From the IMG/VR virus record IMGVR_UViG_3300032294_002797, positions 124,001-188,000 of that record: 64,000 bases of DNA; one strand, given 5' to 3'. How positions within the stretch are numbered: position 1 is the first letter of the stretch; each line of letters begins with the position of its first letter. The notes beneath the pieces are model-generated. The model ran no database searches, was not told where the DNA came from, and saw nothing but the letters and a program-made list of their open reading frames with translations. The position numbers and the translations under genes are program-made. Of the stretch, positions 4,729 to 59,392 are shown in pieces.

Positions 4729-5892
4729 TTAGTTAGGCAATAGAGGGAGAATATCTTGTTTAATCTCTTCTATTGTCATTTCTCCTATATCATTTTTTCG
4801 GATATTATCGGGTATAATAACTTTGTATGTATTTTGACATTTTGATCTAATTTGTTCTGCTGCTTTTTTTCCTGCTTCATCATTATCGGCCAAAACGAAC
4901 ACGCTCATCGCTCCTGATCCATCAAGAATCATTTTTTGACGATCACTAATAGATGAGCCGAAAATGGCAACGCTGTGATGAATACCGGCTTCTTCTAGTC
5001 TCCATACATTACCCGGACTCTCTACAATAATAACATATTGATCTTTGTGTATATGATCTTTTGCAAACCAATAGTTATATAAGTGATTTTGACTTTTAAA
5101 ATTTAAGCTGTGTTTCCATTTAGAATACATATATTTGTATTCTTCTTTGGGACACGCTAGTATAGGATCGTGAAACAGATGGCAGTCGTTACACTTCTCA
5201 TATATACTTCTGCCTGAGCATCCAATCATATACTCATGCTTATTATCATATATAGGAGCAACCACTCTATTATACATTTCTTTATTTGGCTTATTACATA
5301 AGCCTATATCATATTTATCTAAAATCTCTTTAGAAAATCCTCTATTAATAAAATACTCGGATGGAATAATCAAATTTTTTCTGACAGTATCTCTATTGGG
5401 ATGATTGGTTTTTTCAGACATGCGAGGATTCGACATCTGGTTAATAATGGATGTAAACTGTTGCTTATTTCTATGAGTAGTAGAGATTTTAATATCTGCT
5501 AAATTTTTATTGAGAAATTTAGAAACAAAATCTATAGTTTCTTTAAAAGAGCATGCTTCATCACCATCTTTTGACCAATCATATTTGGAATGAGATAAAA
5601 TGCCTCTCACAAAACCTAGTATAGAACCTTTAAAAATTTGTTCACAATTATGAGTTCTGCACTTCCAATTACCCCTATAAGAATCTCCTTGCACATAAAG
5701 ATTTATGGCACTTATATTATCTCCTCCATGTATAGGACAAGCCATAGAAATCATTTTAGAGGATGTTTTGTATTCTAAAGAAAAATGATTTAGTAGTTCT
5801 TCTATATTATCACAAAGATTATCGCACAAAATTTTAAGTTTTGCTTGATCATTCAAATGGGATTTCTGATTCGTTTTTTTCATTGTTTTCAT
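4729..5892 (-). CDS. dnaG: DNA primase (zinc finger + TOPRIM)
   Basis: CPIHGGDN...WKCRTHNC zinc finger; IIVESPGNVW and LADNDEAG TOPRIM motifs. Confidence 0.88.
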   Translation of the reverse strand: MKTMKKTNQKSHLNDQAKLKILCDNLCDNIEELLNHFSLEYKTSSKMISMACPIHGGDNISAINLYVQGDSYRGNWKCRTHNCEQIFKGSILGFVRGILSHSKYDWSKDGDEACSFKETIDFVSKFLNKNLADIKISTTHRNKQQFTSIINQMSNPRMSEKTNHPNRDTVRKNLIIPSEYFINRGFSKEILDKYDIGLCNKPNKEMYNRVVAPIYDNKHEYMIGCSGRSIYEKCNDCHLFHDPILACPKEEYKYMYSKWKHSLNFKSQNHLYNYWFAKDHIHKDQYVIIVESPGNVWRLEEAGIHHSVAIFGSSISDRQKMILDGSGAMSVFVLADNDEAGKKAAEQIRSKCQNTYKVIIPDNIRKNDIGEMTIEEIKQDILPLLPN

Positions 5893-16542: not shown

Positions 16543-17721
16543 CTAAAGGACATTTAATGCTTTGCAGAGCCACTCTATTTGTTCTTCTTTTAGAGCTGGA
16601 TATAACCCCACATAGAAACCATTAGTGTGTAAAAACTGTGAATTCGAATACTCTCTATCTATGTTATGTGTTTGATTAAATATGTTTTTATAACATGTTT
16701 GCTTACCTAAAAATCCAGATATGATAGGTCTATACTCTATGCCAGAATCGTTGCAAAATTTCATGGCTTTTTTAGTAATCTCAAGATCCTGTGAAACGAT
16801 AGGTAAACAGAACGGAACGTCTGTACACAGTAATCTTGGATCTGGCAAATAAAATTTATTCTTATCCAATAAAGTTTTGTATAATGCATATAGTTCTATA
16901 CGTCTTTTTTGATAATATGTGGCTCTATCCAGATCTAACATTCCTATAAAAGCATTAAGATCACTATTTCTATAGTTAGAACCAAAACAATAAAAATCAA
17001 AAGATTCATCTACATCATCATTTATAAATTGGTCTTTATTTATACCATATGAGTCTAGGCTTCTGGTCATTCCATGATTGCGCAACATCAAAAAATACTC
17101 GTATTCTTTTAGACTAGAAGTGAACACAAAGCCCCCTTCGATGGATTGTATTTGATGTCCAAAATAGGTGGATGTAGTAGATGTAAAATATGACGAAATG
17201 TTCCTATTATCAAATAGTCCTAAAGTATTTTCACAGTTATCCATCATTACGGGGATTCCGTATTGTTTATGAATATTTTGATAAAAGGTAATATTAGGAA
17301 CAAAACCTATAAGAGATGTGGGAAAGATAGCAGCTATACTATCGCTATATTTGTCTAGTAGACTCATCAGCATATCTTCATTGATGCAAAAATCTTTGAG
17401 TTGAATATCCACAAAAAGAGGCTCATACCCTTCTCTTATCCATGGAGAGCAAGAGGTTTGCCATGTGGTAGATGGAAGCACAATAAATTTTTTATCTGTT
17501 TCGTGCCGATCTTTGAAGTATTGTACCAGTAGAGTATTGGCTGCCGAGCCGCTTGATACAAATAAAGCGTATTTAATTCCAATAAATTTTGACATTTTGT
17601 CTTCAATATCTTGAACTTTGACAGATTGTGTCCATCTATTTTTTTGATCAAGTATAAAATTAGCAATTTGCTCTCTGTCGGATAATGTAAAATTATTTGT
17701 ATTTAATGGCCAACTAATCAT
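16543..17721 (-). CDS. PLP-dependent DegT-family enzyme, ColD-like NDP-4-keto-6-deoxysugar 3-dehydratase
   Basis: FVSSGSAAN, MDNCE, STYFGHQIQSIEGG (His at the usual Lys position), LRNHGMTR, YRPIISG. Confidence 0.8.
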   Translation of the reverse strand: MISWPLNTNNFTLSDREQIANFILDQKNRWTQSVKVQDIEDKMSKFIGIKYALFVSSGSAANTLLVQYFKDRHETDKKFIVLPSTTWQTSCSPWIREGYEPLFVDIQLKDFCINEDMLMSLLDKYSDSIAAIFPTSLIGFVPNITFYQNIHKQYGIPVMMDNCENTLGLFDNRNISSYFTSTTSTYFGHQIQSIEGGFVFTSSLKEYEYFLMLRNHGMTRSLDSYGINKDQFINDDVDESFDFYCFGSNYRNSDLNAFIGMLDLDRATYYQKRRIELYALYKTLLDKNKFYLPDPRLLCTDVPFCLPIVSQDLEITKKAMKFCNDSGIEYRPIISGFLGKQTCYKNIFNQTHNIDREYSNSQFLHTNGFYVGLYPALKEEQIEWLCKALNVL

Positions 17722-18740
17722 TATCTCAGCTCCTGTAATACTTTTATAAGATTATCGCATGTATTATCCCAGCTAAAATTCTCTCTTATATATTGATGAA
17801 TAGTATCTGGTTTAAATGTTTTATAGTTTGTTAATATAGCTTCTATTTGTTTCGCTATACTAACCTCATCTAGTTCAAATATATATGGTTGATATTTATA
17901 ATGAGTCATGGGTATATAATTATCTATACCTATTGTCTGCATTCTATCAACCATAGCTTGGGTAAAAGGCACCTCTTTTCCTTGAATCAGATATCCAACT
18001 TTCTCCGAAACAATTTCTGGCGGAGCTGAATAGTTAGTAACAATATTGGGTATTCCACAAGACAAAGTTTGTGTTATAGTCATCCCAAAACCCGTACATA
18101 AAATAGGATATATATGAGCATGACACCTATTATAAAGAATTCTCAGTTCTTCATCTGTTGCATCTGATGTGTCATAAATAATATCACTATTATATTGTTT
18201 ATTAATATTTTCTATAAAAGGAGCCAATTTAGAATTTGGTCTATCTTTAATATATAATCGGATATTCTTATTTTGAAAATATTTTCCAAACACTGGAATA
18301 AGAGTATCTAAACCAGATCTACTGTTGGATGTTGTGTGGCACAAAATAGTGAATTTATCGAACTTATTTATATTGTCTAAAGGTTTCCAAAAATCAACAT
18401 CGCAGCCCAATAGAACTGAAGAAGTATTGTTATATCCAGATCTGTTCCAGCAGTCCTCTACCCATTTTGCTGTTCCGATCATCATATCTTTTCCGATCCA
18501 CTGTACAAGATAATCGGGTACTGTAGAAACTTCCCATGCACAATAGTAAAAATTCTTTTTAGTTTTATCAGGATGTTTGTGAGCAACATTAGTAGAAGAA
18601 CATACTCCATAATGAGTCAGTTCATTATCTGTTGAAGCCAATAAGCCTCGTCGTTCCAAGGCCATATTGATATTATCTGATACTATTCTATAAGACCCCT
18701 TGGACCCCGGGGCTTCTGGCGTATCTATATAGATTTTCAT
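17721..18740 (-). CDS. Glycosyltransferase family 4-like (GT-B)
   Basis: CTGFGMTITQTLSCGIPNIVTNYSAPPE, FSWDNT. Confidence 0.85.
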   Translation of the reverse strand: MKIYIDTPEAPGSKGSYRIVSDNINMALERRGLLASTDNELTHYGVCSSTNVAHKHPDKTKKNFYYCAWEVSTVPDYLVQWIGKDMMIGTAKWVEDCWNRSGYNNTSSVLLGCDVDFWKPLDNINKFDKFTILCHTTSNSRSGLDTLIPVFGKYFQNKNIRLYIKDRPNSKLAPFIENINKQYNSDIIYDTSDATDEELRILYNRCHAHIYPILCTGFGMTITQTLSCGIPNIVTNYSAPPEIVSEKVGYLIQGKEVPFTQAMVDRMQTIGIDNYIPMTHYKYQPYIFELDEVSIAKQIEAILTNYKTFKPDTIHQYIRENFSWDNTCDNLIKVLQELR

Positions 18741-19699
18741 TGGATATTTCTTTTTACTAAGATATTATCTATAATATCCAAAGGAGCACCGGGAATCAAG
18801 TTTGTGTTGTATTTAGAACATACTTCAATCAGTTGTTGCACATTTGAAATTGGATAATGTAATGGCATTACGCTCCATATAAAAGGATTCCATCTTATAT
18901 ACTGATGAACCGGTAGATTTCCGTACTCTGTGATTTGAGACAAGAAATTAATAGTGGGAGTATTAACCGAATATCCTAAAAATTTCAAGCCACTATCTAA
19001 TGTTAAAAATAGTTCTGAATTTTGTATAATTTTGGCCACATTGGTTATATTATTCACCACTACGGCTGCATACTGAGCACATGAATCATAAAAGTGTTTA
19101 TTGGCATCCGTAGCTAATATTACTAGTGAATATTTTTGTGCTAATTGTTTGATTAGATTTTGTACATACTCTGTATCAAGCCTATTGGCTGCGTTAGAGT
19201 CCGAATATAAGTTGATAGCTATTTGATTTTTTATTACTTTTTTTGGCCCCAAATTTATTTCAATAGGTAAGAATCGATAAAAATATTTATTCCAATTAAA
19301 ATCATAATTCATCCATTTCAGACCATCTATATGTAGATCATACAATGTGTCATAATCATTTAACATTTTGTATCTATATTCATCTGGAATATTATCAAAA
19401 GATGCTATATATTTTTCTGTGCCAAATTGATGAGTAATAATATAGTTTTTATTTTTTTTTGTAGGTATTACTTCTATGTTTTCAAAAAGCGTGGGCCACA
19501 AAGTTTCTATCAAATTTTTTGCAGCATAGTTATTCTCTGTGTCAGAAAATCCATAAAATTCACAATCAGCATATAACTCTTTAATAGCGGGTAAAAATCT
19601 TATAGCGCATAGGTGATCTCCTATGCCTCCTTCTAATCTTAATGCTATTTTTTTTATCATTATATTATTTACCACACAGTAAAGAAAGTACTGCTTCAC
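18737..19699 (-). CDS. GT9-like (heptosyltransferase-type) glycosyltransferase
   Basis: RLEGGIGDHL N-terminal motif; ELFLTLDSGLKFLGYSVNTPTI C-terminal motif. Confidence 0.75.
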   Translation of the reverse strand: MKQYFLYCVVNNIMIKKIALRLEGGIGDHLCAIRFLPAIKELYADCEFYGFSDTENNYAAKNLIETLWPTLFENIEVIPTKKNKNYIITHQFGTEKYIASFDNIPDEYRYKMLNDYDTLYDLHIDGLKWMNYDFNWNKYFYRFLPIEINLGPKKVIKNQIAINLYSDSNAANRLDTEYVQNLIKQLAQKYSLVILATDANKHFYDSCAQYAAVVVNNITNVAKIIQNSELFLTLDSGLKFLGYSVNTPTINFLSQITEYGNLPVHQYIRWNPFIWSVMPLHYPISNVQQLIEVCSKYNTNLIPGAPLDIIDNILVKRNIQ

Positions 19700-20222
19700 T
19701 TATCTCTAATGGATCAATTTTTTGTATTAGATTATTCGGGTCATTGTACCCATAAGTTGGCTTAATTTGGCTAAAATCTGGCTGTAATATTCTAATATCT
19801 TTGTATGATGAAAAATAGGGGCCAGAGATAGAACTATAATGACAGTATATGGCTACTATCTTTTTATTATAGTGAGATGCAAGATGCACAGGCAAACTAT
19901 CAAAACCTAAATGTAATTCTGAGTGTTTTATCAAATACGCCAAATTATTATAAGAAGTAGCTCCAAGATACTCTGTGTTAATACCATTAAATCTATGGTC
20001 GATCAGTCCGCCGACTTGTACAATCTCATGATCAAATTCTTTATGCTGCAATAGTGTGTCGATAACTATTTGCCAATGTTCGTATTGTCTGGACGAACCC
20101 TTAGGATTGAAGCCATGAAAAGTTATGTACTTATTTTTTGGCAGAGGCATGCTTTCTTCTTTGATAAAACATTTACCAATTTGAGCACCACAAGACACGG
20201 CGTATGTTTCTAATAAATGCAT
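19665..20222 (-). CDS. GT9-like glycosyltransferase, C-terminal domain only
   Basis: IVQVGG...LAYLIKHSELHLGFDSLPVHLASHYNKKIVAIY; no N-terminal GD motif. Confidence 0.75.
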   Translation of the reverse strand: MHLLETYAVSCGAQIGKCFIKEESMPLPKNKYITFHGFNPKGSSRQYEHWQIVIDTLLQHKEFDHEIVQVGGLIDHRFNGINTEYLGATSYNNLAYLIKHSELHLGFDSLPVHLASHYNKKIVAIYCHYSSISGPYFSSYKDIRILQPDFSQIKPTYGYNDPNNLIQKIDPLEISEAVLSLLCGK

Positions 20223-20223
20223 T

Positions 20224-20661
20224 TTATTTCTTTATATTAAAGGCTATTTTTGTTTGACCATTATTCAAATAGTTTAAGTGTCTTTGAGTAAAAATAGATA
20301 AAATAATGCTTATATCAAAAAGACCTTTCCATAATCCCGACCCCTCCATCGCTATCTGGTTCTCCATGATGGGATAGTATTTGATCACTTTGTATATATG
20401 AGGATTATCCTCTAAAATACGAAAATATTCAGGTTTGCAAGCATAATAAATGTATGATTCAGGATATAGCTCTTTGAATGACTCCAATAAGCTAGTAGAT
20501 AAGAAAATATCACCAGCACTTTCCGGTAAAATGAGTAGTATATTTAATTTATCGGTGGTGTCTACAAGACTATTAATAATATCTATTTGTTCTTGTTCTT
20601 TTGATATCATGGTATTTATCAAACAGACTGTCGTGATATAGGAAATTTGTGAATGATACAA
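20224..20661 (-). CDS. GT9-like glycosyltransferase, N-terminal domain only (true start probably MISKEQ near 20610)
   Basis: LPESAGDIFLSTSLLESFKELYP...LEDNPHIYKVI. Confidence 0.7.
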   Translation of the reverse strand: MYHSQISYITTVCLINTMISKEQEQIDIINSLVDTTDKLNILLILPESAGDIFLSTSLLESFKELYPESYIYYACKPEYFRILEDNPHIYKVIKYYPIMENQIAMEGSGLWKGLFDISIILSIFTQRHLNYLNNGQTKIAFNIKK

Positions 20662-21236
20662 TAAAATAGGCGATCAATGACTATTTTTTCGTAAAGAATA
20701 TCGCTATTGTCGAAATATTCTAAAATTGCTTTTTCTACTCCCAAACCATGATGTCGTTTATAATGATTGAAAACCATAACGCCTCCCTCTACTAATCTGG
20801 GCCAAAATAAATTGATGGCTGCTTTTGTGGATTCATATAAATCTAAATCTATATGAACCAAGCTAAATTTTTCATCGGTTAAAAATGATGCAGATTCGGG
20901 GAGCCATCCGGGGAAAAAAAGACAGTTGGGTTTGTCGTCCAGATAATCTTTAACTTGTAGTAAGGAGGTATCAGAGAAATCACCTTTTCTATGGTCACTG
21001 GGCAGAACATCGTTTTCATGAATACCGTCAAAAGAATCAAACAAAAATATTTTTTTATTAGGAAAAATAGTAGCTAATAATCTAGCGCTACCCCCTTTAT
21101 ATACTCCGCATTCAGCTATGTCACCAGGAAGATTTTTTTTAAGAATATTAACGGAGGCCCCCTCCAAAACAGACATTTTTGGACCCAGCAAAGAATTATC
21201 GGGCTTCTGACTAAATGCTGATTCTATATAGGACAT
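20619..21236 (-). CDS. TylF/MycF-family O-methyltransferase
   Basis: GDIAECGVYKGGS, FLFDSFDG, VHIDLDLYES. Confidence 0.88.
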   Translation of the reverse strand: MSYIESAFSQKPDNSLLGPKMSVLEGASVNILKKNLPGDIAECGVYKGGSARLLATIFPNKKIFLFDSFDGIHENDVLPSDHRKGDFSDTSLLQVKDYLDDKPNCLFFPGWLPESASFLTDEKFSLVHIDLDLYESTKAAINLFWPRLVEGGVMVFNHYKRHHGLGVEKAILEYFDNSDILYEKIVIDRLFYCIIHKFPISRQSV

Positions 21237-21637
21237 ATATTTGCTTTTATGGATAAAAGTATGCTAGATGTAGATACCGATGATATTTTGGGGAACAAAA
21301 TAGTTGCTCTACTATGTTCTGATCCAATCACGGTCTTATCTCTATAATCATCTCCAACCACTATAGTATCAACATCATTATTTTTAATCAAGCCTCTTAG
21401 TGCATCGTCGCTATTAAAAATATAGACACTATCTATATACTTTATAGACTCTAATAACATTTTTCTATTTTGTTCATTATTAATTGGTCTATTGGAACCT
21501 TTGAGTAGTTTTACTCTCTCGTCTCCGTCTATACCAACAATGAGTTTATCTCCTAGTGATTTAGCATATTCAAAGAGTTTGATATGTCCTATGTGTAATA
21601 TATCAAAACATCCATTTGTCCAAATCGTACGACTCAT
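21224..21637 (-). CDS. RfaE domain II/HldC-like sugar-1-phosphate nucleotidyltransferase
   Basis: WTNGCFDILHIGH, KGSNRPIN, VGDDY, STS. Confidence 0.88.
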   Translation of the reverse strand: MSRTIWTNGCFDILHIGHIKLFEYAKSLGDKLIVGIDGDERVKLLKGSNRPINNEQNRKMLLESIKYIDSVYIFNSDDALRGLIKNNDVDTIVVGDDYRDKTVIGSEHSRATILFPKISSVSTSSILLSIKANICPI

Positions 21638-22392
21638 GGTGTTACTACTCCAAACTGACCTACGACCTTAGAAGCACATTGATTAGCAAACATAATAGCG
21701 TTTTCAATATTAGCATGTTGTACATAGGCTATAACTAATGCTGCTAAAAAAGTATCTCCAGCACCACAAACATCTCTTAATATTACTTTGTCGGTAGGAA
21801 ATTGTCTTTTGGACCCATTTTGATATAATGATGCTCCGTCTTCTCCTTCTGTGACTATTAACGAGCAGTGTTTAATGCTCGTAGCATCCGTTACATTTTG
21901 TTTAAATTCATTGGAGTTAATTTTAATGTAATCTACAGCTTGGGTTAAGATTGAACAGACAGACTTTTTGGTATCTAAAAAGGTCACGCAGGATTCTTTT
22001 TTTTGCGAACAAATTTTACTAATATCATCTGAGCTTAAGAAACCTTTACAATAGTCCGAAAAAACTATCACATCATAATTACTAAAATCATACCCGTCAA
22101 TATCTATGGGCTCACAAACATCATTAATATCTTCTCTAAAAACAATAGTATTATATTTTTTATCTACAAATCGTTTTTTAATTATATTAGATCTGGTAGT
22201 GATTAATTCTATATTATGATTTGTATTCAAAGCTAATAAATTTTGGTAAACATTACCAGCCATACCAGGATTGAATGTTATATCTTCATTGTGCTTGAAA
22301 CACAAGGCTGCCGCTTCTGGACACACCCTGTCGCATGTGCCATACACATACTGATCGGTACAAGATTCTCCTATTACAGCTATTCTGATCAT
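21634..22392 (-). CDS. PfkB-family kinase, RfaE domain I/HldA-like
   Basis: IAVIGESCTDQYVYGTCDRVCPEA, SDYCKG, DVCGAGDTF. Confidence 0.88.
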   Translation of the reverse strand: MIRIAVIGESCTDQYVYGTCDRVCPEAAALCFKHNEDITFNPGMAGNVYQNLLALNTNHNIELITTRSNIIKKRFVDKKYNTIVFREDINDVCEPIDIDGYDFSNYDVIVFSDYCKGFLSSDDISKICSQKKESCVTFLDTKKSVCSILTQAVDYIKINSNEFKQNVTDATSIKHCSLIVTEGEDGASLYQNGSKRQFPTDKVILRDVCGAGDTFLAALVIAYVQHANIENAIMFANQCASKVVGQFGVVTP

Positions 22393-22682
22393 GAGAAAAA
22401 TATTTCTGAGTTTATAGACTTGTCATCAATATAAAGATCATAAACTGGTTTATGAAATAATAATGAATGATATAAACAACCCCAGCTATTAAGCTGCTGA
22501 ATAGTTAGTGATTGCCAATCAATGCCACTTTTTGATCCTCTTGCGGTCCAGTATACTATAGTATGACCACTATTATATAACAAGTTAATTTTTTCTATAC
22601 GCGTTTTTATTGGTTGCGAATTAACATAATCACTACCGGATGTTAAGCATATGGTATTGTCTATATCTACTGCGTATATCAT
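22389..22682 (-). CDS. Small HAD-superfamily phosphatase
   Basis: DIDNTI, YWTARG, KP..DLYIDDK. Confidence 0.85.
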   Translation of the reverse strand: MIYAVDIDNTICLTSGSDYVNSQPIKTRIEKINLLYNSGHTIVYWTARGSKSGIDWQSLTIQQLNSWGCLYHSLLFHKPVYDLYIDDKSINSEIFFS

Positions 22683-23059
22683 GGTATACTAGGTATGATC
22701 CTATATGAATCATTATCATCATGATGAGTAGAAATCTCTATAAAATCGCAAGGAGTATCCGTATTATTACTAGAAAACCTATGTACAGTATATGGTTCTA
22801 TAGTGAAAGATTCCCCCTTTTTTAGTATAATCGTATCTACTAAGTCCAAATTCCATATATCCTCATTCATGTTCTGCGAATACTTGAGAAGCAATTCTCC
22901 GTCGATCACATAAAAAGTCTCTTTTTTATTTTTGTGAAAATGGGCAGAGCACCATTTATTTGGTTTTACATGAAGATGTTTGCCACAATATAGGTCATTA
23001 TTTTCTATCCATATTTCATATCCCCAAACTTTATCTACAAATTTATGCATACATAACAT
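22679..23059 (-). CDS. Cupin-fold sugar isomerase/epimerase
   Basis: KVWGYE, SAHFHKNKKETFYV, PYTVHRF, EIST. Confidence 0.8.
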   Translation of the reverse strand: MLCMHKFVDKVWGYEIWIENNDLYCGKHLHVKPNKWCSAHFHKNKKETFYVIDGELLLKYSQNMNEDIWNLDLVDTIILKKGESFTIEPYTVHRFSSNNTDTPCDFIEISTHHDDNDSYRIIPSIP

Positions 23060-23104
23060 CTCCGTGTAATAGATTTAATATTATAGATTGGATACGTGAT
23101 AACG

Positions 23105-25555
23105 TCAAGGAGCCAAAAAGCTAAATGATGGAGGCCCGCATATCAACTGATCCAATGACGGATCCCATGTTCCTTCTTCTAGACTAATGCCTGTTTGAGT
23201 CACACTAGGATGGTAATATCCTTTGGTAACGCTACCCAGATTAGACGAACCGATATAAAATCTAGCCTCTCCAAAAATAAATCCGTAGTTTACTGATCCG
23301 GACCCAAATGAAGCTACGCCAATACCTGTGCCTATATTATTGCTATTTTCACAATATGAAATATTATCAGCAGTGATTTTACCTTCATTATTAGAATCAT
23401 ATAATGAAACATTGTTAGCAAATAATTGCGTATTTTTTTTACATGTGCTTCCACCAAAAAAACCAACAGAATTAATATAAGATTGTCCACTTGGGGTTGA
23501 GGCACCATCGACGAATAATGCGGACTGTGAGACAACAGCATAAACCAACTTGGCATTGCCCATAATCAATCCTTGTATGAAAGATTTAGAAAAGAATTGA
23601 CTATTATCACTCAAACTTACTTTAGTTACTGCACCAGAAACTTTAGCATTGTCATAAGCATCAATCATAGTATGAACACCATTACCAGCAGAACTTTGAT
23701 CTCTAAGAGTTATTAATCCCTTGCTGTTTAAGCATATGGATGAGTCATACAAAGTGCCCATTGTATCTAAATTTTCGACTTTAGAATTGTCATATAACTT
23801 AATATTGCCTGATCCTTTGATTGTCTCCACCCAGCTATTGTCATACAATTGAAGTGATCCACTATAGCTGGTCATCGTTATTTCTTTAGCATAACTAGTA
23901 TCGTACATGCTACAGATGCCGCTATTAATAGTAATAGTACCGCTACTCTTAGTATTAGAGTAACAATTCAAAAAGCCACTTGGTAATGTAGCACCAACTA
24001 TACTACTAGTATCATAAAAATTAGTATTTATTAAACTAGCATTCGAGGACATGCCGCTATTATAAAAAGATGCTTCCCAGAGCGGCCCAATGTTTGTGGA
24101 TTTATCGTAGAATAAGTGGCCTGTTCCGGCAACTTTATTAATACTCTCATTCTTAAATATACCATTAGATATAGTGCCGTTATTTTGAGATTGGTCAAAA
24201 AATAAACAAGTCGTCGGTTGACCCATATTCTGAGAATTACAATAAAATTCCGCAGCACCTCCGAAGCCATAATTGAGACTACCACATAAATAATGACCCT
24301 TATTTACTAAACCATAGTTATATGAGCCATCAAAATAAATTTCGCTACCGGAGCCATAATTTATAGACTGTTGATTAAAGCTAATATTATTACCTTTAAT
24401 AGAACCAGAATTTATAGAGTTTTCAAAACTAAATGATCCTTCTATGATTCCTTTTTCTTTATTAAGACTAGATACAAAAGAAGCATTATTGTCAACTAAG
24501 CAGAATGCATTATTAGTTAATTTTAAAGCTCCAGAAGCACTTACAGTCAAACGACCATAATTAGTAATATGTGGCTTAGATAATCCAGATACAGATGATA
24601 AAGATAATACTCCGCTATTACTAATAGAACCCAAGAAATGTGTTGTATTTATTGTACCACTAGCTAGGATCATATTGTCTTGATTTTGAGATTCTAATGT
24701 TTGTGATACAATATTTCCATTAATTGTCACACTGTTCTGTAAATCAAGGGTGTCCGCAGATATACTAGATCCGGCCAGTATACGACTATTTGATATTGAT
24801 AATAGTTTATTATTACTACCTTCTTGAGAAATAGTACTCTTTATGTCGCAGTCTGTTAAAGTGCCTAATTCACAAAAAATACTACAATCAATAAGTGGAG
24901 TATTGGAACAGTCAAAAACTATGGTTTCCAGCGCACACTCAGCAATAGAACTATTTTCTATTTTTATATATTCTGTATTAGCTGCAATACTATCTATTTT
25001 TGTATTATTTTTTATATCTATATCAGAGCATGTAATATTGATATTATAGAGGTAAGCATCGGTAATTTCTAAATTGTTGGTGGATACCACTCCGTCTGCA
25101 TAGGTTGCATTATTAACTTTAGTATTATATGCATTTAATTCTTTATTATTCAAGCCTATATTATCTATTTTGATTTGACTATTGGAAGACAGATAGCCTA
25201 TACTATATGTAGGATCTATAGTATACCATCCATGGGTTGCTCGTAAAGGATTATTGGCCATGATACCGCTAAGGGCTTCTCCAGTAGGGTGTCTAGGATT
25301 ATTATCCCCTTCAGCTGTAAAAACCCCTTTACTAGAACCTTGTATGGTTAAAATTCTATCTTGTTTATCAAAAGTTGTAGTAATAGAGCCTATCCCGCTA
25401 AGACCACAACTTCCCGCATTAACCATATTAATAGTTTCATCGTTCTTAATAACACCTATAATTTCTATGTCCTCAATAGGTCTAGGTACTCTTTTGCTCG
25501 GAATAGATCCGTCTGGATCTAATGAATATTTATTAGTATTACATAAATTAATCAT
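23105..25555 (-). CDS. Large S/N/G-rich beta-helix repeat virion/fibre protein
   Basis: Recurring FxDxSxNxG and LYDxS repeats; 816 aa. Confidence 0.7.
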   Translation of the reverse strand: MINLCNTNKYSLDPDGSIPSKRVPRPIEDIEIIGVIKNDETINMVNAGSCGLSGIGSITTTFDKQDRILTIQGSSKGVFTAEGDNNPRHPTGEALSGIMANNPLRATHGWYTIDPTYSIGYLSSNSQIKIDNIGLNNKELNAYNTKVNNATYADGVVSTNNLEITDAYLYNINITCSDIDIKNNTKIDSIAANTEYIKIENSSIAECALETIVFDCSNTPLIDCSIFCELGTLTDCDIKSTISQEGSNNKLLSISNSRILAGSSISADTLDLQNSVTINGNIVSQTLESQNQDNMILASGTINTTHFLGSISNSGVLSLSSVSGLSKPHITNYGRLTVSASGALKLTNNAFCLVDNNASFVSSLNKEKGIIEGSFSFENSINSGSIKGNNISFNQQSINYGSGSEIYFDGSYNYGLVNKGHYLCGSLNYGFGGAAEFYCNSQNMGQPTTCLFFDQSQNNGTISNGIFKNESINKVAGTGHLFYDKSTNIGPLWEASFYNSGMSSNASLINTNFYDTSSIVGATLPSGFLNCYSNTKSSGTITINSGICSMYDTSYAKEITMTSYSGSLQLYDNSWVETIKGSGNIKLYDNSKVENLDTMGTLYDSSICLNSKGLITLRDQSSAGNGVHTMIDAYDNAKVSGAVTKVSLSDNSQFFSKSFIQGLIMGNAKLVYAVVSQSALFVDGASTPSGQSYINSVGFFGGSTCKKNTQLFANNVSLYDSNNEGKITADNISYCENSNNIGTGIGVASFGSGSVNYGFIFGEARFYIGSSNLGSVTKGYYHPSVTQTGISLEEGTWDPSLDQLICGPPSFSFLAP

Positions 25556-27445: not shown

Positions 27446-28978
27446 TTAATCTATTGGATCTACTTCCATATGTCTGTGTCCATTTGCTACTACTGCATCT
27501 ATATTGCCAGCAGAAATTGTTGTTGTACTCACGGAAACATTTGACATGGATCCAGCGTTATAATAATAACCAGCCCATCCGATTATACAACTGGGGTAGG
27601 TGCAGCTGGCTATAATCGACCCATAAGCATTTTCTATATTATGATAAAATGCTAAAAAATGGATTTTTTTTTGAAAAACCGTAACAGACCCTATACTTGT
27701 GTGGTTTGTGGTTATAATTTGATCAGTGTAGTCATAGTCTGGAGCAGAATCGAGCATAAGATAGGAAGTAATCACAGGGTGGGGTTTTAGTCTAGCCATG
27801 TTAAGAGACACCACCCCTTGAGTAATATTCCCACTATTAACAGAATATCCTGTCCAATTGATGGGTTCTCCATTAGGTCCTGTCATAGATGGATAGACCA
27901 GCGGAAGAGTGGATGTAATGTATATTTCTTTATAATATCCTTCACATTTAACTTTATTATAGTTTAATCGTTTAATATTATTTGGTAAAAACAATGGAAA
28001 GATAAATTGTTGATCTATATTAGATATAGCAGCTAATAGATTATTAGGAGAGATATTACTGGGGATATGTACTTTTTTAAGCAAACCTATCTCATATGGG
28101 TATGGCCAACTGTTTGTGGGTTTCAAATAAATACCAGATCCTGGGTTTGCATTTAAACCGGTGGTAGAGATCATGCCGCTATTAAATTTACCTCCTAGTC
28201 CACCATATACAGAGCCAGCAGATGATGACGAACTAAAAGATATTTCTATATTATTACCAGCTCTAGCATTTAAACCAGTAGTATATATAATACCACTATA
28301 CGGCCATGTATTTTCGAATTCTACTGATATGAGATTGTCTGTTTTGGTATTCAATCCTGTGGTTGAAATAATACCACTCCAATATTTACCTTCTGTTCCT
28401 CCATACTTATTACTAGCCGGGGAGCCTGATTGAAATTGTACTTCGATATTATTTCCTGGTCTAGCATTTAATCCGGACTGATATAACACACCACTATAAG
28501 GCCATATGGTCTCATGTTCTTTAACAATCAGATTTTCTGTACGAGTATTTAATCCTGTCGTAGAAATGATGCCGCTGTAATATGGCGAACCAACCCCGCC
28601 GTATCTGTTAGCTGCTATAGTACCACTATTAAATTGTATATCTATATTATTGCCATTTTTGGCATTGAGGCCCGTAGTAGATATTACTTGTGGACTATGG
28701 GGATAAACCTCGGGATAATCTAAACGAATTAAATTACCAATACTTTGATGAGTAGTGATATAAAATAAATTTTCTCCAGTATTATAGTATCCAGAAAAAC
28801 CGGATATAAAAAAAATCATTTCATTTAATCGAACTATATCTTTACGAATTCTGTCAAGGCTGATTTTCTTATTTTCTGGATATGAGCCCGGAGAATTATA
28901 GCCCGTTACCACAACCATAAGATCGTGGTCATAAATTTTATCTGCTGATTCTAATTGAGATATTTTTGAATCAGGCAT
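27446..28978 (-). CDS. Virion structural protein with an internal (AB)3 repeat
   Basis: N-terminal KISQL fibre-type motif; ISTTGLN-type repeats. Confidence 0.7.
   Translation of the reverse strand: MPDSKISQLESADKIYDHDLMVVVTGYNSPGSYPENKKISLDRIRKDIVRLNEMIFFISGFSGYYNTGENLFYITTHQSIGNLIRLDYPEVYPHSPQVISTTGLNAKNGNNIDIQFNSGTIAANRYGGVGSPYYSGIISTTGLNTRTENLIVKEHETIWPYSGVLYQSGLNARPGNNIEVQFQSGSPASNKYGGTEGKYWSGIISTTGLNTKTDNLISVEFENTWPYSGIIYTTGLNARAGNNIEISFSSSSSAGSVYGGLGGKFNSGMISTTGLNANPGSGIYLKPTNSWPYPYEIGLLKKVHIPSNISPNNLLAAISNIDQQFIFPLFLPNNIKRLNYNKVKCEGYYKEIYITSTLPLVYPSMTGPNGEPINWTGYSVNSGNITQGVVSLNMARLKPHPVITSYLMLDSAPDYDYTDQIITTNHTSIGSVTVFQKKIHFLAFYHNIENAYGSIIASCTYPSCIIGWAGYYYNAGSMSNVSVSTTTISAGNIDAVVANGHRHMEVDPID
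28085..28690 (-). repeat. Intragenic repeat, about 66 aa (198 bp) period, 3 copies
   Basis: TTGLNA..GNNI.I.F.SG......YGG......SG alternates with IISTTGLNT.T.NLI......WPYSG. Confidence 0.85.
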
Positions 28979-28997: not shown

Positions 28998-29798
28998 TTA
29001 TACGATCTTTTCTGTTTTTAGCCAACTACCAGCTAATACCGCTCCATCTACATTGTTTGCTGCAAATCTAACCAATATTCTATCAGACTCGGTAGCATAG
29101 GTGGATACAGTAAACTTATTTATAGAAGTGGTTAGACTATTATTTACACCATCAGCTATAGTTGACCAGCCGCTCATTGATGACGAGGTATTATAAGTAG
29201 ATTGATTAACAAGATCGTTGGTATTCCAAGTACCATATATATTTAATAGATTATTGTTAGTAGCTAATATACCAGTAGAACTAATTTGACCAGATATTCG
29301 TGTTGAGCTAGTTGTTTGATTCAATATTAATCCAACTTCACAAAGATATTTGGTATTGGGTTTTAAATTTATGCTTAGTTCGTTTAATGCAGTAGGGGCG
29401 CCTGTATACGATACTGGCGTGCCTAAGATTTTAATCTGTTGCTCGATAAGGCCGCTAACAGCATTACCAAAATCAGTAATATCTGCTGATGTATGCTTAT
29501 GTCCAGTATAAGAAACCCCTGTTGTACAAATACTAATTTTATTCATCGATGGTGGAAATAGTCCAGTATTTATATGAGGTATAATCTGAATACCTGTGCA
29601 GCCACTCACCATTTCATTAACCCTAAAAGACCATGCTGCTAGACCGGATACTGGCATTCTAGAAGTAACTAAATCAACAAAGCCCTGACTAGGATCACTA
29701 GGATTCCTATACTGCCCTACTCCTGTTACAACTACTAGATAATCTTTATCAAAAACTCTGCCAGCTTCATTTAGTTCTGAAATTTTACGGTCGGCCAT
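28998..29798 (-). CDS. Virion/fibre structural protein
   Basis: KISEL N-terminus shared with the neighbour; GHKHTSADITDF HxH module. Confidence 0.7.
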   Translation of the reverse strand: MADRKISELNEAGRVFDKDYLVVVTGVGQYRNPSDPSQGFVDLVTSRMPVSGLAAWSFRVNEMVSGCTGIQIIPHINTGLFPPSMNKISICTTGVSYTGHKHTSADITDFGNAVSGLIEQQIKILGTPVSYTGAPTALNELSINLKPNTKYLCEVGLILNQTTSSTRISGQISSTGILATNNNLLNIYGTWNTNDLVNQSTYNTSSSMSGWSTIADGVNNSLTTSINKFTVSTYATESDRILVRFAANNVDGAVLAGSWLKTEKIV

Positions 29799-34375: not shown

Positions 34376-35779
34376 TCACCTAAAAATAGCTACAGAAATA
34401 TTAGAAGTATCAAATAATGTGTTAGTCGCCCCCTGCATAACGACAACAGGAACTGCGGTAGTTGTTTTGGTTCTTTGTGAATTTTGACCTACTACTCCTG
34501 CTCTAGATTGTCCATCCCAATTTGCAGATCCTATAATAGCGTATAGTGTGTCTGGCATACTTACGCCCAAATTCAGAGTATAATCTCCAACACCATTATC
34601 TGTGATAGATGAAAAATTAATTGCCCCAATTATACTTGGTGTTGATGTACCATTAAAAACAACCCAACCTCGACAAAAACAGGCTGGTTTAACCCCAGAT
34701 GCCACTGCTCCAGCTACTGTGCAGTCCCAAAAACCATTAGAGCTTAATACTAATTGGGTGTGTCTACGATCAACAGTTTTACTACCTGCTTCAGTATTAC
34801 TAAAAGTCATTGACGTAGAGCCGTCGGGATTTCTTAATAGTAGAATACTAGAATCTTCTATTCCATTCTGGTTTGCTGAAGAAAGAAACCCTGCTGACTG
34901 AGCTGCTGTGGTATCTAGATTAGATCGTAACCTCATGCCGACAAAAGTTGACGAAGAAGTAACTGTGGCCGTATCTGTGAATGTTGGTGTGACCAATCCT
35001 AGAGTAGATCGAGCGGTGGCCGCGTCGGCATCATCAATTAAACTACGGCCAAATGATGTGCAAGTTATTTCTTGAACCACGCCAGCACCAGCACCAGATC
35101 GTCCCAAGATTCTATCTGTGGCTGAAACGTTTTGTATTTTGGCGTATGTAACGTTAGCATCTACTATTTTAGCTGTTGTTACAGTTCCATCAGTTGGTGT
35201 GCGAGTATCAGATAAACGACTATCATTACCTACACAGAAACTATTAGCGGTATTTCCGAATGATCCTACTGTAATAGCGCCAGCAGTTGTGGTAATAAGG
35301 GGCAAATTAGCAGTTGCTCCAATTGCTCCAGCATTTGTGATATTACCGTGAGTGTGACTAAGCGGAGTACGAGAATCAGATAACCTACTATCATTACCTT
35401 GGCAAAAGGTATTAGCTGTAGTACCAAATGATCCTGTTGTAATAGCGCCAGCTGTTGTTGTGATAAGCGGTAAATTTGCGGTAGATCCTATGGCTCCAGC
35501 ATTAGTAATATTACCATGAGTATGGCCGCTGACACTAACAGCTATGCCACCAACGCTTAAACTAGTAAAATTACCGCTACTACTACTTAATAGGGCTCCG
35601 CTTATAGAAACTCCGCTATTTGGCAAGATAGCATATGGTAAACTATTCCATGTAGAAGTACCATCTCCAAACTTTATGCGTCCGGTATCTGTTTCTAAAA
35701 TCATCTCTCCAGCTAATAGAACGGGATTAACCGAAGCTAAATTAGCTGCTGTACCTCTTAAATTTTGTATTTGTGGCAT
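34376..35779 (-). CDS. Tail fibre protein with Mtd_N/hyaluronidase-type N-terminus
   Basis: NPVLLAGEMILETDTGRIKFGDGTSTWNSLPY; HTHGNIT modules; C-terminal SSITDNGVGDYTLN. Confidence 0.85.
   Translation of the reverse strand: MPQIQNLRGTAANLASVNPVLLAGEMILETDTGRIKFGDGTSTWNSLPYAILPNSGVSISGALLSSSSGNFTSLSVGGIAVSVSGHTHGNITNAGAIGSTANLPLITTTAGAITTGSFGTTANTFCQGNDSRLSDSRTPLSHTHGNITNAGAIGATANLPLITTTAGAITVGSFGNTANSFCVGNDSRLSDTRTPTDGTVTTAKIVDANVTYAKIQNVSATDRILGRSGAGAGVVQEITCTSFGRSLIDDADAATARSTLGLVTPTFTDTATVTSSSTFVGMRLRSNLDTTAAQSAGFLSSANQNGIEDSSILLLRNPDGSTSMTFSNTEAGSKTVDRRHTQLVLSSNGFWDCTVAGAVASGVKPACFCRGWVVFNGTSTPSIIGAINFSSITDNGVGDYTLNLGVSMPDTLYAIIGSANWDGQSRAGVVGQNSQRTKTTTAVPVVVMQGATNTLFDTSNISVAIFR
35195..35524 (-). 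repeat. Tandem duplication of a 56-aa (168 bp) fibre segment
   Basis: HTHGNITNAGAIG.TANLPLITTTAGAIT.GSFG.TAN.FC.GNDSRLSD.RTP, twice. Confidence 0.9.
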
Positions 35780-45465: not shown

Positions 45466-45789
45466 TTATCTCTGTGGTGGAACAAATAAACCTTCTAATA
45501 CTCCCACAGGATTGTCTCCTAATAATTCATTTATTCGATCTTCTACCTGAGCTGTAGTATAATCGCCAATGTTGGTATAGTCGGTATCTTTCCATAAAAC
45601 TAAAGGATAAGGACAAGGAACTATTCTAACCATACAGGTTTTACGCTTAATATTATCAAATATAGTATAATCTAGTTCATTAATAGTGATAGGTTTTTGA
45701 ACTCTTACTTCTCCATTAGAGCGAGTGATGGTTGGAGGTTGTATAGTTATTGGGTTGTTTAGATTCATTTTTGATTCCTTTATGGACAA
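45466..45789 (-). CDS. Small fibre-associated protein (probable start MNLNNP)
   Basis: LVLWKDTDYTNIGDYTTAQVEDRINELLG; follows the beta-helix gene. Confidence 0.65.
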   Translation of the reverse strand: MSIKESKMNLNNPITIQPPTITRSNGEVRVQKPITINELDYTIFDNIKRKTCMVRIVPCPYPLVLWKDTDYTNIGDYTTAQVEDRINELLGDNPVGVLEGLFVPPQR

Positions 45790-57765: not shown

Positions 57766-57771
57766 AGTAAC

Positions 57772-58896: not shown

Positions 58897-58902
58897 ATAA
58901 TA

Positions 58903-59382: not shown

Positions 59383-59392
59383 TATGACTTCC

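What the first reader, a model, noticed from the sequence alone, without database searches (positions are those of the whole stretch)
16543..23059. Ten-gene phage cluster for making and transferring a modified heptose or deoxy-sugar
Seen: coupled genes encode a cupin, a HAD phosphatase, an HldA-like PfkB kinase, an HldC-like nucleotidyltransferase, a TylF O-methyltransferase, three GT9-like ORFs, a GT4 and a ColD-like enzyme. Known: kinase, phosphatase and nucleotidyltransferase form the core of NDP-heptose synthesis (HldE/GmhB), and GT9 enzymes are typically heptosyltransferases. Campylobacter capsule pathways further modify heptoses by 3-dehydration, epimerisation and O-methylation. Inference: the phage makes its own activated, modified sugar and transfers it. 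The cluster directly follows the virion genes in transcription order, so virion proteins are a plausible acceptor. Host surface glycans or DNA are alternatives. No GmhA or 4,6-dehydratase is visible in this window.
Basis: partly seen in the sequence, partly recalled or inferred. Interest (0 to 1): 0.7.

Follow-up and report, generated by a model that had tools for sequence, protein, structure and literature searches.

The report
Phage heptose-sugar pathway with transferases
A 223-kb phage carries a compact gene set that most likely makes an activated seven-carbon sugar (NDP-heptose) from a common metabolite and attaches it to an unknown target; phage heptose genes were already known, but a small cupin protein here probably replaces the usual first enzyme, and that has not been described.

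Summary

Three corrections:
- The "three GT9-like ORFs" are two enzymes. One is a GT9 that is conserved as two separate polypeptides (N and C halves).
- The ColD-like protein keeps ColD's diagnostic catalytic histidine. Its required partner, a GDP-mannose 4,6-dehydratase, lies about 100 kb away in the same genome.
- No GmhA exists anywhere in the genome.

[quoted passage not shown] In it the metal-dependent cupin does the sedoheptulose-7-phosphate isomerase step. The evidence for the cupin role:
- The cupin travels with the kinase and transferase in every adequately flanked related viral locus.
- In archaea it sits in an operon with HldD, HldA, a GmhB-like HAD and HldC.
- It is fused to the kinase in over 100 Patescibacteria protein clusters.
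- 25 phage records that carry it (24 phages) have no GmhA.

The two GT9-type transferases, a TylF O-methyltransferase and a GT4 then build a small glycan. The acceptor (virion proteins or host envelope) cannot be decided. DNA is unlikely, because there is no ThyA-like hydroxymethylase.

Phage heptose genes are already known from cyanophages, so this is a new variant of a known kind.

The parts
22679..23059 (-). Metal-dependent cupin (123-126 aa). Proposed sedoheptulose-7-phosphate isomerase, the GmhA substitute.
   Evidence: Pfam Cupin_2, Lyx_isomer and MannoseP_isomer. Metal ligands H40, H42, E47 and H93 are invariant in 29 homologues. AF2 model pLDDT 95; the Foldseek top hits are D-lyxose isomerases at 25% identity, then CapF and Thermococcus PMI. 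Synteny and fusions.
22389..22682 (-). Minimal capless HAD phosphatase (97 aa). Proposed heptose-1,7-bisphosphate 7-phosphatase, the GmhB analogue.
   Evidence: TIGR01689 E 8e-9. PDB 9iqw E 8e-17. The DxDxT, T, K and DD motifs are visible in the sequence. The 97-98-aa gene sits between cupin and kinase in L113, L115, L120, L121, L122 and the DNA-less contig encoding P0033.
21634..22392 (-). HldA-like PfkB kinase (252 aa).
   Evidence: TIGR02198 rfaE_dom_I 116.5 bits, against ribokinase at 49 bits. Best PDB hit is heptose 7-phosphate kinase 4e84. The GAGD motif is present.
21224..21637 (-). HldC-like nucleotidyltransferase (137 aa).
   Evidence: TIGR02199 rfaE_dom_II 107 bits, against TagD-type at 80 bits. 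HIGH motif present; 'SVSTS' aligns to the ISTT motif of TagD.
20619..21236 (-). TylF-family sugar O-methyltransferase (205 aa).
   Evidence: PF05711 71.6 bits. PDB relatives are NovP and MycF.
20224..20610 (-). GT9a N-terminal subunit (128 aa from the ATG at 20610; the mechanical ORF starts at the TTG at 20661).
   Evidence: Weak match to the first 54 positions of heptosyltransferase III. It is a separate ORF in L113, L115, L117 and L122. The predicted complex with the C-half scores 0.90 against a best control of 0.00.
19665..20222 (-). GT9a C-terminal subunit (185 aa), the donor-binding half.
   Evidence: PF01075 24.5 bits, above the cut-off of 22. Conserved as a separate ORF. No indel at the junction in contigs of two other samples.
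18737..19660 (-). GT9b, a divergent GT9-fold glycosyltransferase (307 aa; the mechanical ORF starts at the GTG at 19699).
   Evidence: Pfam GT9 reaches only 15.7 bits. AF2 pLDDT 93; Foldseek best matches are WaaC, a Veillonella GT9 and WaaF, then TibC. There are 24 homologues, all metagenomic.
17721..18740 (-). GT4 glycosyltransferase (339 aa).
   Evidence: PF00534 40.9 bits and PF13692 35.5 bits.
16543..17721 (-). ColD-like PMP-dependent sugar 3-dehydratase (392 aa).
   Evidence: PDB 2gms (E. coli O55 ColD) E 3e-36 over residues 1-388. The query His aligns with ColD His188, the position mutated in 3b8x and 2r0t.

Best explanation

Proposed steps:
1. The metal-dependent cupin isomerises sedoheptulose-7-P to D-glycero-D-manno-heptose-7-P. 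This is the same ketose-to-manno-aldose chemistry as phosphomannose and D-lyxose isomerases, and it replaces the SIS-fold GmhA. Inferred.
2. The HldA-like PfkB kinase phosphorylates C1. Inferred from homology.
3. The 97-aa HAD removes the 7-phosphate. Inferred.
4. The HldC-like transferase makes the NDP-heptose. The nucleotide is not determined. Inferred from homology.
5. Two GT9-type heptosyltransferases transfer heptose: one assembled from two separately encoded halves, and one divergent single-chain enzyme. The TylF-type enzyme O-methylates a sugar hydroxyl, probably after transfer as its solved relatives do. The GT4 adds a further sugar.

The ColD-like 3-dehydratase, together with the GDP-mannose 4,6-dehydratase encoded 100 kb away, most likely supplies a GDP-4-keto-3,6-dideoxyhexose (colitose-type) branch from host GDP-mannose for the same glycan.

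The acceptor is unknown. My estimate is about 40% virion fibre or capsid proteins, about 40% host envelope glycan, and the rest other.
For: Domain calls for all ten ORFs.

The pathway is heptose-specific:
- The best family hits of the kinase and transferase are the two HldE domains.
- Homologous modules sit beside HldD at equivalog level in archaea (274-285 bits) and beside HldD-like genes in phages.
- GT9-fold transferases follow the core genes.

The cupin as isomerase:
- A search seeded with the kinase alone found 25 related viral loci besides one identical record. All 23 with usable flank carry the cupin within about 3 kb, in several gene orders.
- None of 22 related viral records, nor this genome, nor cyanophages P-TIM68 and Sf-CH8, has a SIS_2/GmhA gene. 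That is 25 records of 24 phages, because two of the related loci have identical coordinates and scores and are probably one phage.
- The archaeal operons read cupin, HldD, kinase, HAD, NT, which leaves only the isomerase step unassigned.
- Kinase-cupin fusions occur in about 118 of the best 120 homologues of one such fusion, mostly Patescibacteria. One cupin-SDR fusion, the SDR part not scored against HldD, was also found.
- The metal ligands are invariant.
- The nearest structures by sequence identity are D-lyxose isomerases and phosphomannose isomerases.

The split GT9 is real:
- The same two-ORF layout occurs in relatives with 64-87% identical cupins, with different junctions.
- There are no indels in contigs of other samples that differ by 3-7% substitutions.
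- The predicted heterodimer scores ipSAE 0.90, against a best of 3 controls of 0.00. That mark was reached by 58 of 80 solved complexes and 2 of 110 mismatched pairs. The runs share at least 76% of contacts, and partner pLDDT is at least 88.

ColD and GMD:
-.
- In phage locus L013, SDR, ColD, GMD, cupin, NT and kinase lie in one row.
Against: - No enzyme was assayed.
- The kinase and transferase score below NCBIfam equivalog cut-offs (116 against 345 bits; 107 against 181 bits).
- The cupin fold does not discriminate function. Many unrelated cupins score Z 13.7-15.9, and CapF's cupin domain, a nucleotide-sugar C3-epimerase, ranks as high as the isomerases.
- Five of nine cellular genomes that carry the module also hold a SIS_2 protein that could be GmhA.
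- More distant cellular cupins of the family lack kinase or NT neighbours.
- No ColC-type reductase or any second SDR is in the genome, so the deoxy-sugar branch is incomplete on its own.
- GMD and ColD use alpha-GDP sugars, whereas HldA/HldC chemistry gives beta-NDP-heptose, so their link to heptose is uncertain.
- No RNA run was listed, so expression is untested.
Confidence: 0.6

Rival explanations
1. The phage relies on host GmhA for heptose-7-P, and the cupin does something else in the same pathway. One possibility is a CapF-like epimerisation of the nucleotide-sugar. Another is a phosphomannose isomerase feeding the GDP-mannose, GMD and ColD branch.
For: The CapF cupin domain (a C3-epimerase) is among the best structural matches. 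A cupin-SDR fusion exists (L040). GMD, ColD and an SDR lie next to the cupin in L013. Some cellular carriers have SIS_2 proteins.
Against: The cupin accompanies the kinase and NT even where no SDR, GMD or ColD is near, as in L004, L005, L121 and this cluster. An epimerase of keto-sugars needs an oxidoreductase partner, and this genome has none besides GMD. Fusion to the kinase, the enzyme of the next step, is far commoner than fusion to an SDR. The archaeal SDR partner scores as HldD, so those operons lack only an isomerase.
Confidence: 0.2
2. The cluster glycosylates phage DNA, as a hypermodified base carrying a sugar, in the manner of glucosyl- or arabinosyl-hydroxymethylcytosine phages.
For: The cluster abuts dCMP deaminase, RNR and a MazG-type pyrophosphohydrolase. 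Known arabinosyl-DNA clusters also combine GT4-like transferases, a small 1xpj-like HAD, a kinase and a nucleotidyltransferase (PMC13326640). The HAD here also hits 1xpj weakly.
Against: There is no thymidylate-synthase-like pyrimidine hydroxymethylase in the whole genome at E <= 1; only ThyX is present. GT9-fold enzymes are not known on DNA. The same module occurs in T4-like cyanophages within sugar-gene islands.
Confidence: 0.05
3. The split GT9, and possibly other genes of the cluster, are decaying remnants, so the cluster no longer transfers heptose.
For: A GT-B enzyme in two ORFs in different frames looks like a frameshift. GT9b fails the Pfam threshold.
Against: Both halves are conserved at 53-82% identity as separate ORFs in four diverged relatives, with different junction spacing. 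Strain variants carry substitutions but no indels. The halves are confidently predicted to dock.
Confidence: 0.05

Closest known systems
Bacterial ADP-L-glycero-beta-D-manno-heptose pathway (GmhA, HldA/HldE-N, GmhB, HldC/HldE-C, HldD)
   Same: The kinase and nucleotidyltransferase belong to the same families. The order of chemical steps is the same, and GT9 enzymes consume the product.
   Different: There is no SIS-fold GmhA; a cupin takes that slot. The phosphatase is a 97-aa capless HAD of the TIGR01689/9iqw type, not GmhB. This genome has no HldD, so the D,D-heptose form is expected. The kinase is about 60-80 residues shorter than HldA.
Heptose genes of T4-like cyanophages (P-TIM68, Sf-CH8; annotated heptose kinase/NT genes also in S-SM2, S-T4) and the 'viral NDP-heptose biosynthetic enzymes' of Tang et al. 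2024 (as summarised in PMC11461863)
   Same: The four-gene module is the same: kinase E 1e-40, NT 2e-39, cupin 3e-23 and HAD 3e-23 against P-TIM68. It is likewise embedded among glycosyltransferases and epimerases.
   Different: In those records the HAD is labelled 'phosphoheptose isomerase' and the cupin 'cysteine dioxygenase' or 'putative nucleotidyltransferase'. The commentary states that the phosphatase is absent in viruses. Here the module is joined to a split GT9, a second GT9-fold enzyme, TylF, GT4 and ColD in a 223-kb phage that is not T4-like in layout.
E. coli O55 colitose pathway (GMD, ColD, ColC)
   Same: The ColD homologue aligns over its full length with the catalytic His conserved. 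A GMD is present in the genome.
   Different: GMD and ColD lie 100 kb apart. No ColC-type reductase or epimerase is present, and no ManB or ManC, so substrate and final reduction must come from the host or an unrecognised enzyme.
Split GT-B glycosyltransferase Alg13/Alg14
   Same: The two Rossmann halves of one GT-B enzyme are encoded as separate polypeptides that must associate.
   Different: The family differs (GT9, not GT1/28-like). The break falls near the end of the N-domain, and there is no membrane anchor subunit. The resemblance is recalled from general knowledge and was not tested here.
Protein heptosyltransferases TibC/AAH (BAHT) and mycobacteriophage virion glycosylation operons
   Same: ADP-heptose-dependent GT-B enzymes that act on proteins do exist. 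TibC is among GT9b's structural matches. This phage encodes serine- and threonine-rich fibre proteins and a 421-aa repeat protein next to the region.
   Different: TibC ranks below WaaC and WaaF (E 1e-6 against 1e-9). Its iron-finger and dodecamer features were not examined. The mycobacteriophage comparison is from memory only.

Membership tests
Canonical NDP-heptose pathway | SIS-fold sedoheptulose-7-phosphate isomerase GmhA | tested here: not met
   PF13580 finds nothing in the 223-kb genome at E <= 1, while the control rings in 13 of 14 genomes.
Canonical NDP-heptose pathway | PfkB-type heptose-7-phosphate kinase (HldA / HldE domain I) | tested here: met
   TIGR02198 E 1e-33, 116.5 bits. 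It is the best family by a wide margin but below the equivalog cut-off of 345. Top PDB hit is HldA 4e84.
Canonical NDP-heptose pathway | GmhB-type HAD 7-phosphatase | tested here: inconclusive
   A HAD with all catalytic motifs is present, but it belongs to the TIGR01689/9iqw subfamily, not GmhB. Its substrate was not tested.
Canonical NDP-heptose pathway | HldC-type heptose-1-phosphate nucleotidyltransferase | tested here: met
   TIGR02199 E 6e-31, 107 bits, against a cut-off of 181.5. The HIGH and ISTT-like motifs are present. Nucleotide specificity is unresolved, and the STTR5 arginine could not be placed.
Canonical NDP-heptose pathway | HldD 6-epimerase | tested here: not met
   The only PF01370 hit in the genome is the GMD. 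HldD is present next to the module in archaeal and some phage relatives.
CAZy GT9 heptosyltransferases | GT-B fold with a match to the GT9 profile | tested here: met
   For GT9a: the C-half scores PF01075 24.5 bits, above 22. The N-half matches the start of TIGR02201. The halves are predicted to dock.
CAZy GT9 heptosyltransferases | The same, for GT9b | tested here: inconclusive
   Pfam gives 15.7 bits, below 22. There is no PDB hit by sequence. By predicted structure the nine best chains are WaaC, a Veillonella GT9 and WaaF, at E 1e-9 to 1e-8, TM about 0.53 and 11-13% identity.
ColD-type sugar 3-dehydratases | DegT-family fold with His in place of the Schiff-base Lys | tested here: met
   The alignment to 2gms is end to end at E 3e-36. 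The query His aligns to ColD His188, the position changed in the deposited variant sequences 3b8x and 2r0t.
Colitose pathway | GMD upstream and a ColC reductase/epimerase downstream | tested here: inconclusive
   GMD is present (TIGR01472 377 bits, cut-off 415). No ColC or other SDR is present.
TylF sugar O-methyltransferases | Match to PF05711 above threshold | tested here: met
   71.6 bits against a cut-off of 23. NovP and MycF are the nearest solved relatives.
Phage DNA sugar-hypermodification clusters (hmC / 5hodC type) | Thymidylate-synthase-like pyrimidine hydroxymethylase | tested here: not met
   PF00303 finds nothing at E <= 1. Only ThyX is present.
Metal-dependent cupin aldose-ketose isomerases (D-lyxose/mannose isomerase, cupin PMI) | Cupin barrel with a His-His-Glu-His metal site, and isomerase activity | tested here: inconclusive
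   The metal ligands are invariant. Pfam Lyx_isomer and MannoseP_isomer score above their cut-offs. The nearest structures by identity are lyxose isomerases. Activity is not testable here.

The most novel reading that the evidence does not exclude
The small cupin is a previously unrecognised class of sedoheptulose-7-phosphate isomerase that has replaced GmhA in a very large set of marine and freshwater phages (the ESM Atlas lists over a thousand almost exclusively viral members), in Patescibacteria (fused to the heptose kinase) and in DPANN and other archaea. Together with a mislabelled mini-HAD phosphatase, it gives these viruses a complete four-enzyme route from a central metabolite to NDP-heptose. 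In this phage group the sugar is then placed, and methylated, on virion proteins by a two-subunit GT9.
Probability: 0.35. Interest if true: 0.75.

Novelty: new variant of a known kind. Interest (0 to 1): 0.6.

Why it matters
NDP-heptoses are building blocks of LPS and glycoproteins, and they are innate-immune agonists sensed by ALPK1. Viral heptose genes are counted as auxiliary metabolic genes in ocean surveys.

If the cupin is the isomerase, four things follow:
- The pathway has a second, unrelated entry enzyme.
- Homology screens for GmhA undercount heptose producers in viruses, candidate-phyla bacteria and DPANN archaea.
- The current cyanophage labels are wrong: 'phosphoheptose isomerase' on a phosphatase, and 'cysteine dioxygenase' on the cupin.
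- The reported lack of a viral phosphatase would be explained.

The conserved two-piece GT9 is a natural example of a split GT-B enzyme. Knowing the acceptor would show whether large marine phages coat their particles with, or re-decorate their hosts with, a sugar that the host may not make.

Tried and rejected
- A sigma-70-like site (11 of 12 matches) lies exactly in the gap before the cupin, at 23108-23080. The total count equals that of shuffles, and the -10 part is missing in the 87%-identical relative, so it was not used as evidence.
- Sequence searches of GT9b and the GT9a C-half against PDB found nothing at E <= 1. Structure prediction was needed instead.
- A SIS_2 census in cellular carriers of the module is ambiguous, because SIS_2 also covers DiaA- and GlmS-type proteins and the genomes are partial MAGs.
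- The VIA second look showed that the cupin fold alone does not separate isomerases from other cupins.
- The STTR5 arginine that predicts CDP- or UDP-heptose synthesis could not be placed with confidence, because the motif is divergent.
- No RNA run was listed for the locus.
- Literature searches for cupin together with ADP-heptose or sedoheptulose-7-phosphate isomerase returned nothing relevant. A search for PDB entry 9iqw gave only chance string matches.
- tblastn found no HtrL, GlcNAc-transferase, GT_PLOD or 2OG-oxygenase genes in this genome, although relatives carry them.
- The context of the more distant cellular cupins (about 40% identity or less) was not resolved.

Full report
CONTEXT. 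The window is bases 124001-188000 of a 223,302-bp IMG/VR virus record that CheckV rates complete. All long ORFs lie on the minus strand. In transcription order, several tail-fibre-like proteins and large proteins of unknown function come first. The ten-gene cluster follows. After it come dCMP deaminase, ribonucleotide reductase, a MazG-type pyrophosphohydrolase, PhoH, a recombinase, helicase, primase, exonuclease and DNA polymerase.

THE OBSERVATION. Ten ORFs fill 16543-23059 with 1-13-nt overlaps or gaps of at most 8 nt. Pfam and NCBIfam give these assignments:
- A cupin with Cupin_2, D-lyxose isomerase and mannose-6-phosphate isomerase matches.
- A 97-aa HAD of the 'capsule biosynthesis phosphatase' type.
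- A PfkB kinase whose best family by far is HldE domain I.
- A cytidylyltransferase-fold enzyme whose best family is HldE domain II.
- A TylF methyltransferase.
- Two short ORFs that match the start and the donor-binding part of GT9 heptosyltransferases.
- A 307-320-aa ORF with a sub-threshold GT9 match.
- A GT4.
- A DegT-family enzyme.

The DegT-family enzyme aligns end to end with E. coli O55 ColD (E 3e-36). It has a histidine exactly where ColD has His188. That position carries Asn and Lys in the deposited variant sequences 3b8x and 2r0t, and aminotransferases of the family carry the Schiff-base lysine there (the lysine comparison is from family knowledge).

THE HEPTOSE MODULE IS CONSERVED AND INCLUDES THE CUPIN. 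A search of IMG/VR seeded only with the kinase returned one identical record and 25 related loci at 36-42% identity. In all 23 loci where the flank is available, a homologue of the cupin lies within about 3 kb of the kinase and the nucleotidyltransferase. Gene orders differ between loci, and the small HAD is usually present too.

Closer relatives were fetched through cupin homologues with 64-87% identity. They keep the exact order cupin, 97/98-aa HAD, kinase, transferase.

The cultured cyanophages P-TIM68 and Sf-CH8 carry the same four genes. There the HAD is annotated 'phosphoheptose isomerase', and the cupin 'cysteine dioxygenase' or 'putative nucleotidyltransferase'. The HAD has the DxDxT, Thr, Lys and DD motifs of a phosphatase, so the 'isomerase' label is a misnomer.

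WHY HEPTOSE. Three points support heptose:
- The family hits of the kinase and transferase point to HldE.
- In archaeal relatives the gene next to the cupin scores as ADP-glyceromanno-heptose 6-epimerase at the equivalog cut-off (274-285 bits). In phage loci L008 and L016 an HldD-like gene (203-241 bits) sits in the module. HldD acts on C6, a stereocentre that hexoses lack. This argues against a hexose version of the pathway.
- GT9-fold transferases follow the pathway genes here, in close relatives, and in a gammaproteobacterial locus.

WHY THE CUPIN IS PROBABLY THE ISOMERASE.
1. GmhA is absent. No SIS_2 gene is found in this genome, in 22 related viral records (three of them at least 90% complete), or in the two complete cyanophage genomes. 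Two of the related loci have identical coordinates and scores and are probably one phage, so the 25 records stand for 24 phages.
2. Elimination. The operons in a Woesearchaeota and a Methanosarcinales MAG read cupin, HldD, kinase, GmhB-like HAD, transferase. Every step but the first is assigned to a known family. The Methanosarcinales MAG has only GlmS-type SIS hits.
3. Fusion. In three bacterial loci the cupin is the C-terminal domain of the kinase. A search with one such protein found that about 118 of the 120 best clusters carry both PfkB and Cupin_2. Most are from Patescibacteria, and several are named heptose kinase by JGI. Fusion of consecutive pathway steps also occurs in E. coli HldE and in the isomerase/kinase/transferase fusions described by Tang et al. 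(via PMC11461863).
4. Chemistry. The four canonical cupin metal ligands are invariant across 29 homologues, as are several Lys, Glu and Asp residues. The model is confident (pLDDT 95). The closest solved structures by Foldseek and by sequence identity are D-lyxose/mannose isomerases (25-27%) and small archaeal phosphomannose isomerases (22-23%). Those enzymes interconvert a ketose and a manno-configured aldose, which is the GmhA reaction one carbon shorter (established enzymology).

Caveats on the cupin:
- The cupin fold is promiscuous, and many unrelated cupins score equally by Z.
- The CapF epimerase domain ranks high.
- A cupin-SDR fusion exists. Its SDR part was not scored against HldD, though the SDR that neighbours the cupin in two other archaeal operons is HldD.
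- Some cellular carriers also have SIS_2 proteins.
- More distant family members lack the heptose neighbours.
- I found no paper linking a cupin to this step. The ESM Atlas names the viral clusters only 'cupin' or 'putative nucleotidyltransferase'.

THE TRANSFERASES. The two short GT9 ORFs are in different frames with one base between them, which looks like a frameshift. Four lines of evidence say the split is real:
- Four diverged relatives have the same two ORFs (126-130 aa and 184-189 aa), with junctions of different length and 53-82% identity.
- A contig from another sample covers 17510-23100 with 167 substitutions and no gap. A third sample covers the junction with 42 substitutions and no gap.
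- An identical second record shows the same layout.
- The two halves are predicted to form one GT-B body, with score 0.90 against a best of three controls of 0.00. That mark was reached by 58 of 80 solved complexes and 2 of 110 mismatched pairs. The runs agree in at least 76% of contacts, and partner pLDDT is at least 88. My own shallow alignments were used, so the calibration holds only roughly.

GT9a is therefore a conserved two-subunit enzyme.

GT9b has only 24 homologues in 5.8 billion proteins, all metagenomic. Its model (pLDDT 93) matches WaaC, a Veillonella GT9 and WaaF best, and the protein heptosyltransferase TibC next.

The nearest solved relatives of the TylF enzyme (NovP, MycF) methylate sugars already attached to their aglycone (family knowledge). 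Methylation after transfer is therefore the default reading.

THE DEOXY-SUGAR BRANCH. ColD needs a 4-keto-6-deoxy substrate. The genome's only SDR is a GDP-mannose 4,6-dehydratase (383 bits to the Pfam model; 377 bits to TIGR01472, cut-off 415). It lies at 37.8 kb among unrelated genes. There is no ManC-type transferase and no ColC-type reductase. In another phage (L013) an SDR, a ColD homologue, a GMD and the heptose module lie side by side, so the two branches are co-inherited.

Whether GMD and ColD act on host GDP-mannose or on the phage's heptose nucleotide cannot be decided here. The first is favoured because these enzymes use alpha-GDP sugars. The second would resemble the 3,6-dideoxyheptoses of Campylobacter. 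ColD is present only in the closest relative, so it is an accessory to the conserved core.

THE ACCEPTOR.
- DNA is unlikely. No thymidylate-synthase-like hydroxymethylase exists in the genome, only ThyX. Known sugar-DNA clusters depend on such an enzyme (PMC13326640).
- For virion proteins: the cluster follows a battery of fibre genes here and in relatives. GT9b and GT9a have no close cellular homologues. Relatives carry a collagen-type GT_PLOD domain and 2OG oxygenase near the module.
- For the host envelope: GT9 enzymes classically act on LPS cores, and cyanophage heptose genes are usually read that way (PMC7378029).
- I leave these two at roughly equal odds.

NOVELTY. Phage heptose genes and viral NDP-heptose enzymes are known. 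What appears undescribed:
- The cupin as the entry enzyme.
- The recognition of the mini-HAD as the viral phosphatase.
- The conserved split GT9.
- The combination of these with TylF, GT4 and ColD in a jumbo phage.

I rate it a new variant of a known kind, of moderate to good interest. The cupin hypothesis is cheap to test and would change how heptose producers are counted.

Noticed in passing
window 45780-47045 (minus strand): A 421-aa protein built of about 16-residue repeats of the type G-D-A-T-F-N-D-S-S-x-N-x-G-T-V-T, with many N-x-S/T triplets. The DNA has a 48-nt tandem period and causes the local GC peak (0.43). A long ORF on the opposite strand is probably a by-product of the repeats. 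Beta-helix-like repeat proteins are the substrates of protein heptosyltransferases, so this is a candidate acceptor, but that is speculation only.
   Followed up: partly
window 47042-49084, 41339-44257, 34376-35779; and 28998-29798, 27446-28978: Two sets of fibre-like proteins share N-terminal anchor motifs: one of the type GE.G.D...K.GDG..WN.L, the other M-[AP]-D-x-K-I-S-x-L. This suggests a phage with many alternative receptor-binding proteins. The 816-aa protein just upstream of the cluster is only 57% identical in the closest relative, while its neighbour is 87% identical.
   Followed up: partly
window 56695-59926: A second sugar- and nucleotide-related group holds a GT4 (356 aa), IMPDH, a SET-domain protein and a nucleoside 2-deoxyribosyltransferase-like protein. 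It is conserved next to the heptose cluster in relatives L115, L117 and L122.
   Followed up: partly
G000:C1:37799-38740 (outside the window): A GDP-mannose 4,6-dehydratase gene stands alone between a sigma-factor-like gene, an HNH endonuclease and an ERCC4 nuclease, about 100 kb from its presumed partner ColD.
   Followed up: yes
L123 (P-TIM68) 5069-5838; L124 (Sf-CH8) 2566-3241: Public cyanophage records label the HAD phosphatase 'phosphoheptose isomerase' and the cupin 'cysteine dioxygenase' or 'putative nucleotidyltransferase'. Surveys that count 'gmhA' as a viral auxiliary gene may partly be counting this phosphatase.
   Followed up: partly
window 23080-23108 (minus strand): The best sigma-70-like match of a 19-kb scan (TTGACG, 17 nt, TATAAT) lies exactly in the 45-nt gap before the cupin gene. 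The -10 part is absent in the closest relative, and the overall count equals that of shuffles.
   Followed up: yes
L117 2891-3553 and 9160-10062; L115, L117, L122 and the DNA-less contig encoding P0033, upstream of the module; L120 676-2899: Relatives carry further glycan genes around the heptose module: HtrL/YibB, a PF11397 GlcNAc-transferase, GT25, GT7, a GT_PLOD domain next to a 2OG-Fe(II) oxygenase, and several methyltransferases. None of the four tested (HtrL, GlcNAc-transferase, GT_PLOD, 2OG oxygenase) was found in this genome by tblastn; GT25 and GT7 were not searched for.
   Followed up: partly
L113 18367 onward; L120 9045-11588: Relatives have host-like genes interrupted by mobile elements: PhoH with a LAGLIDADG/Hom_end insert, and IMPDH split around a Hint/NUMOD3 element.
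   Followed up: no
G000:C1:119603-121257 (just outside the window's left edge): Two further ORFs (394 and 559 aa) match Glycos_transf_1, one above and one below threshold.
   Followed up: no
L117 10423-11280: In this relative the mini-HAD (68% identical over 96 residues) is part of a 285-aa protein with a faint methyltransferase match, which may be a phosphatase-methyltransferase fusion.
   Followed up: no
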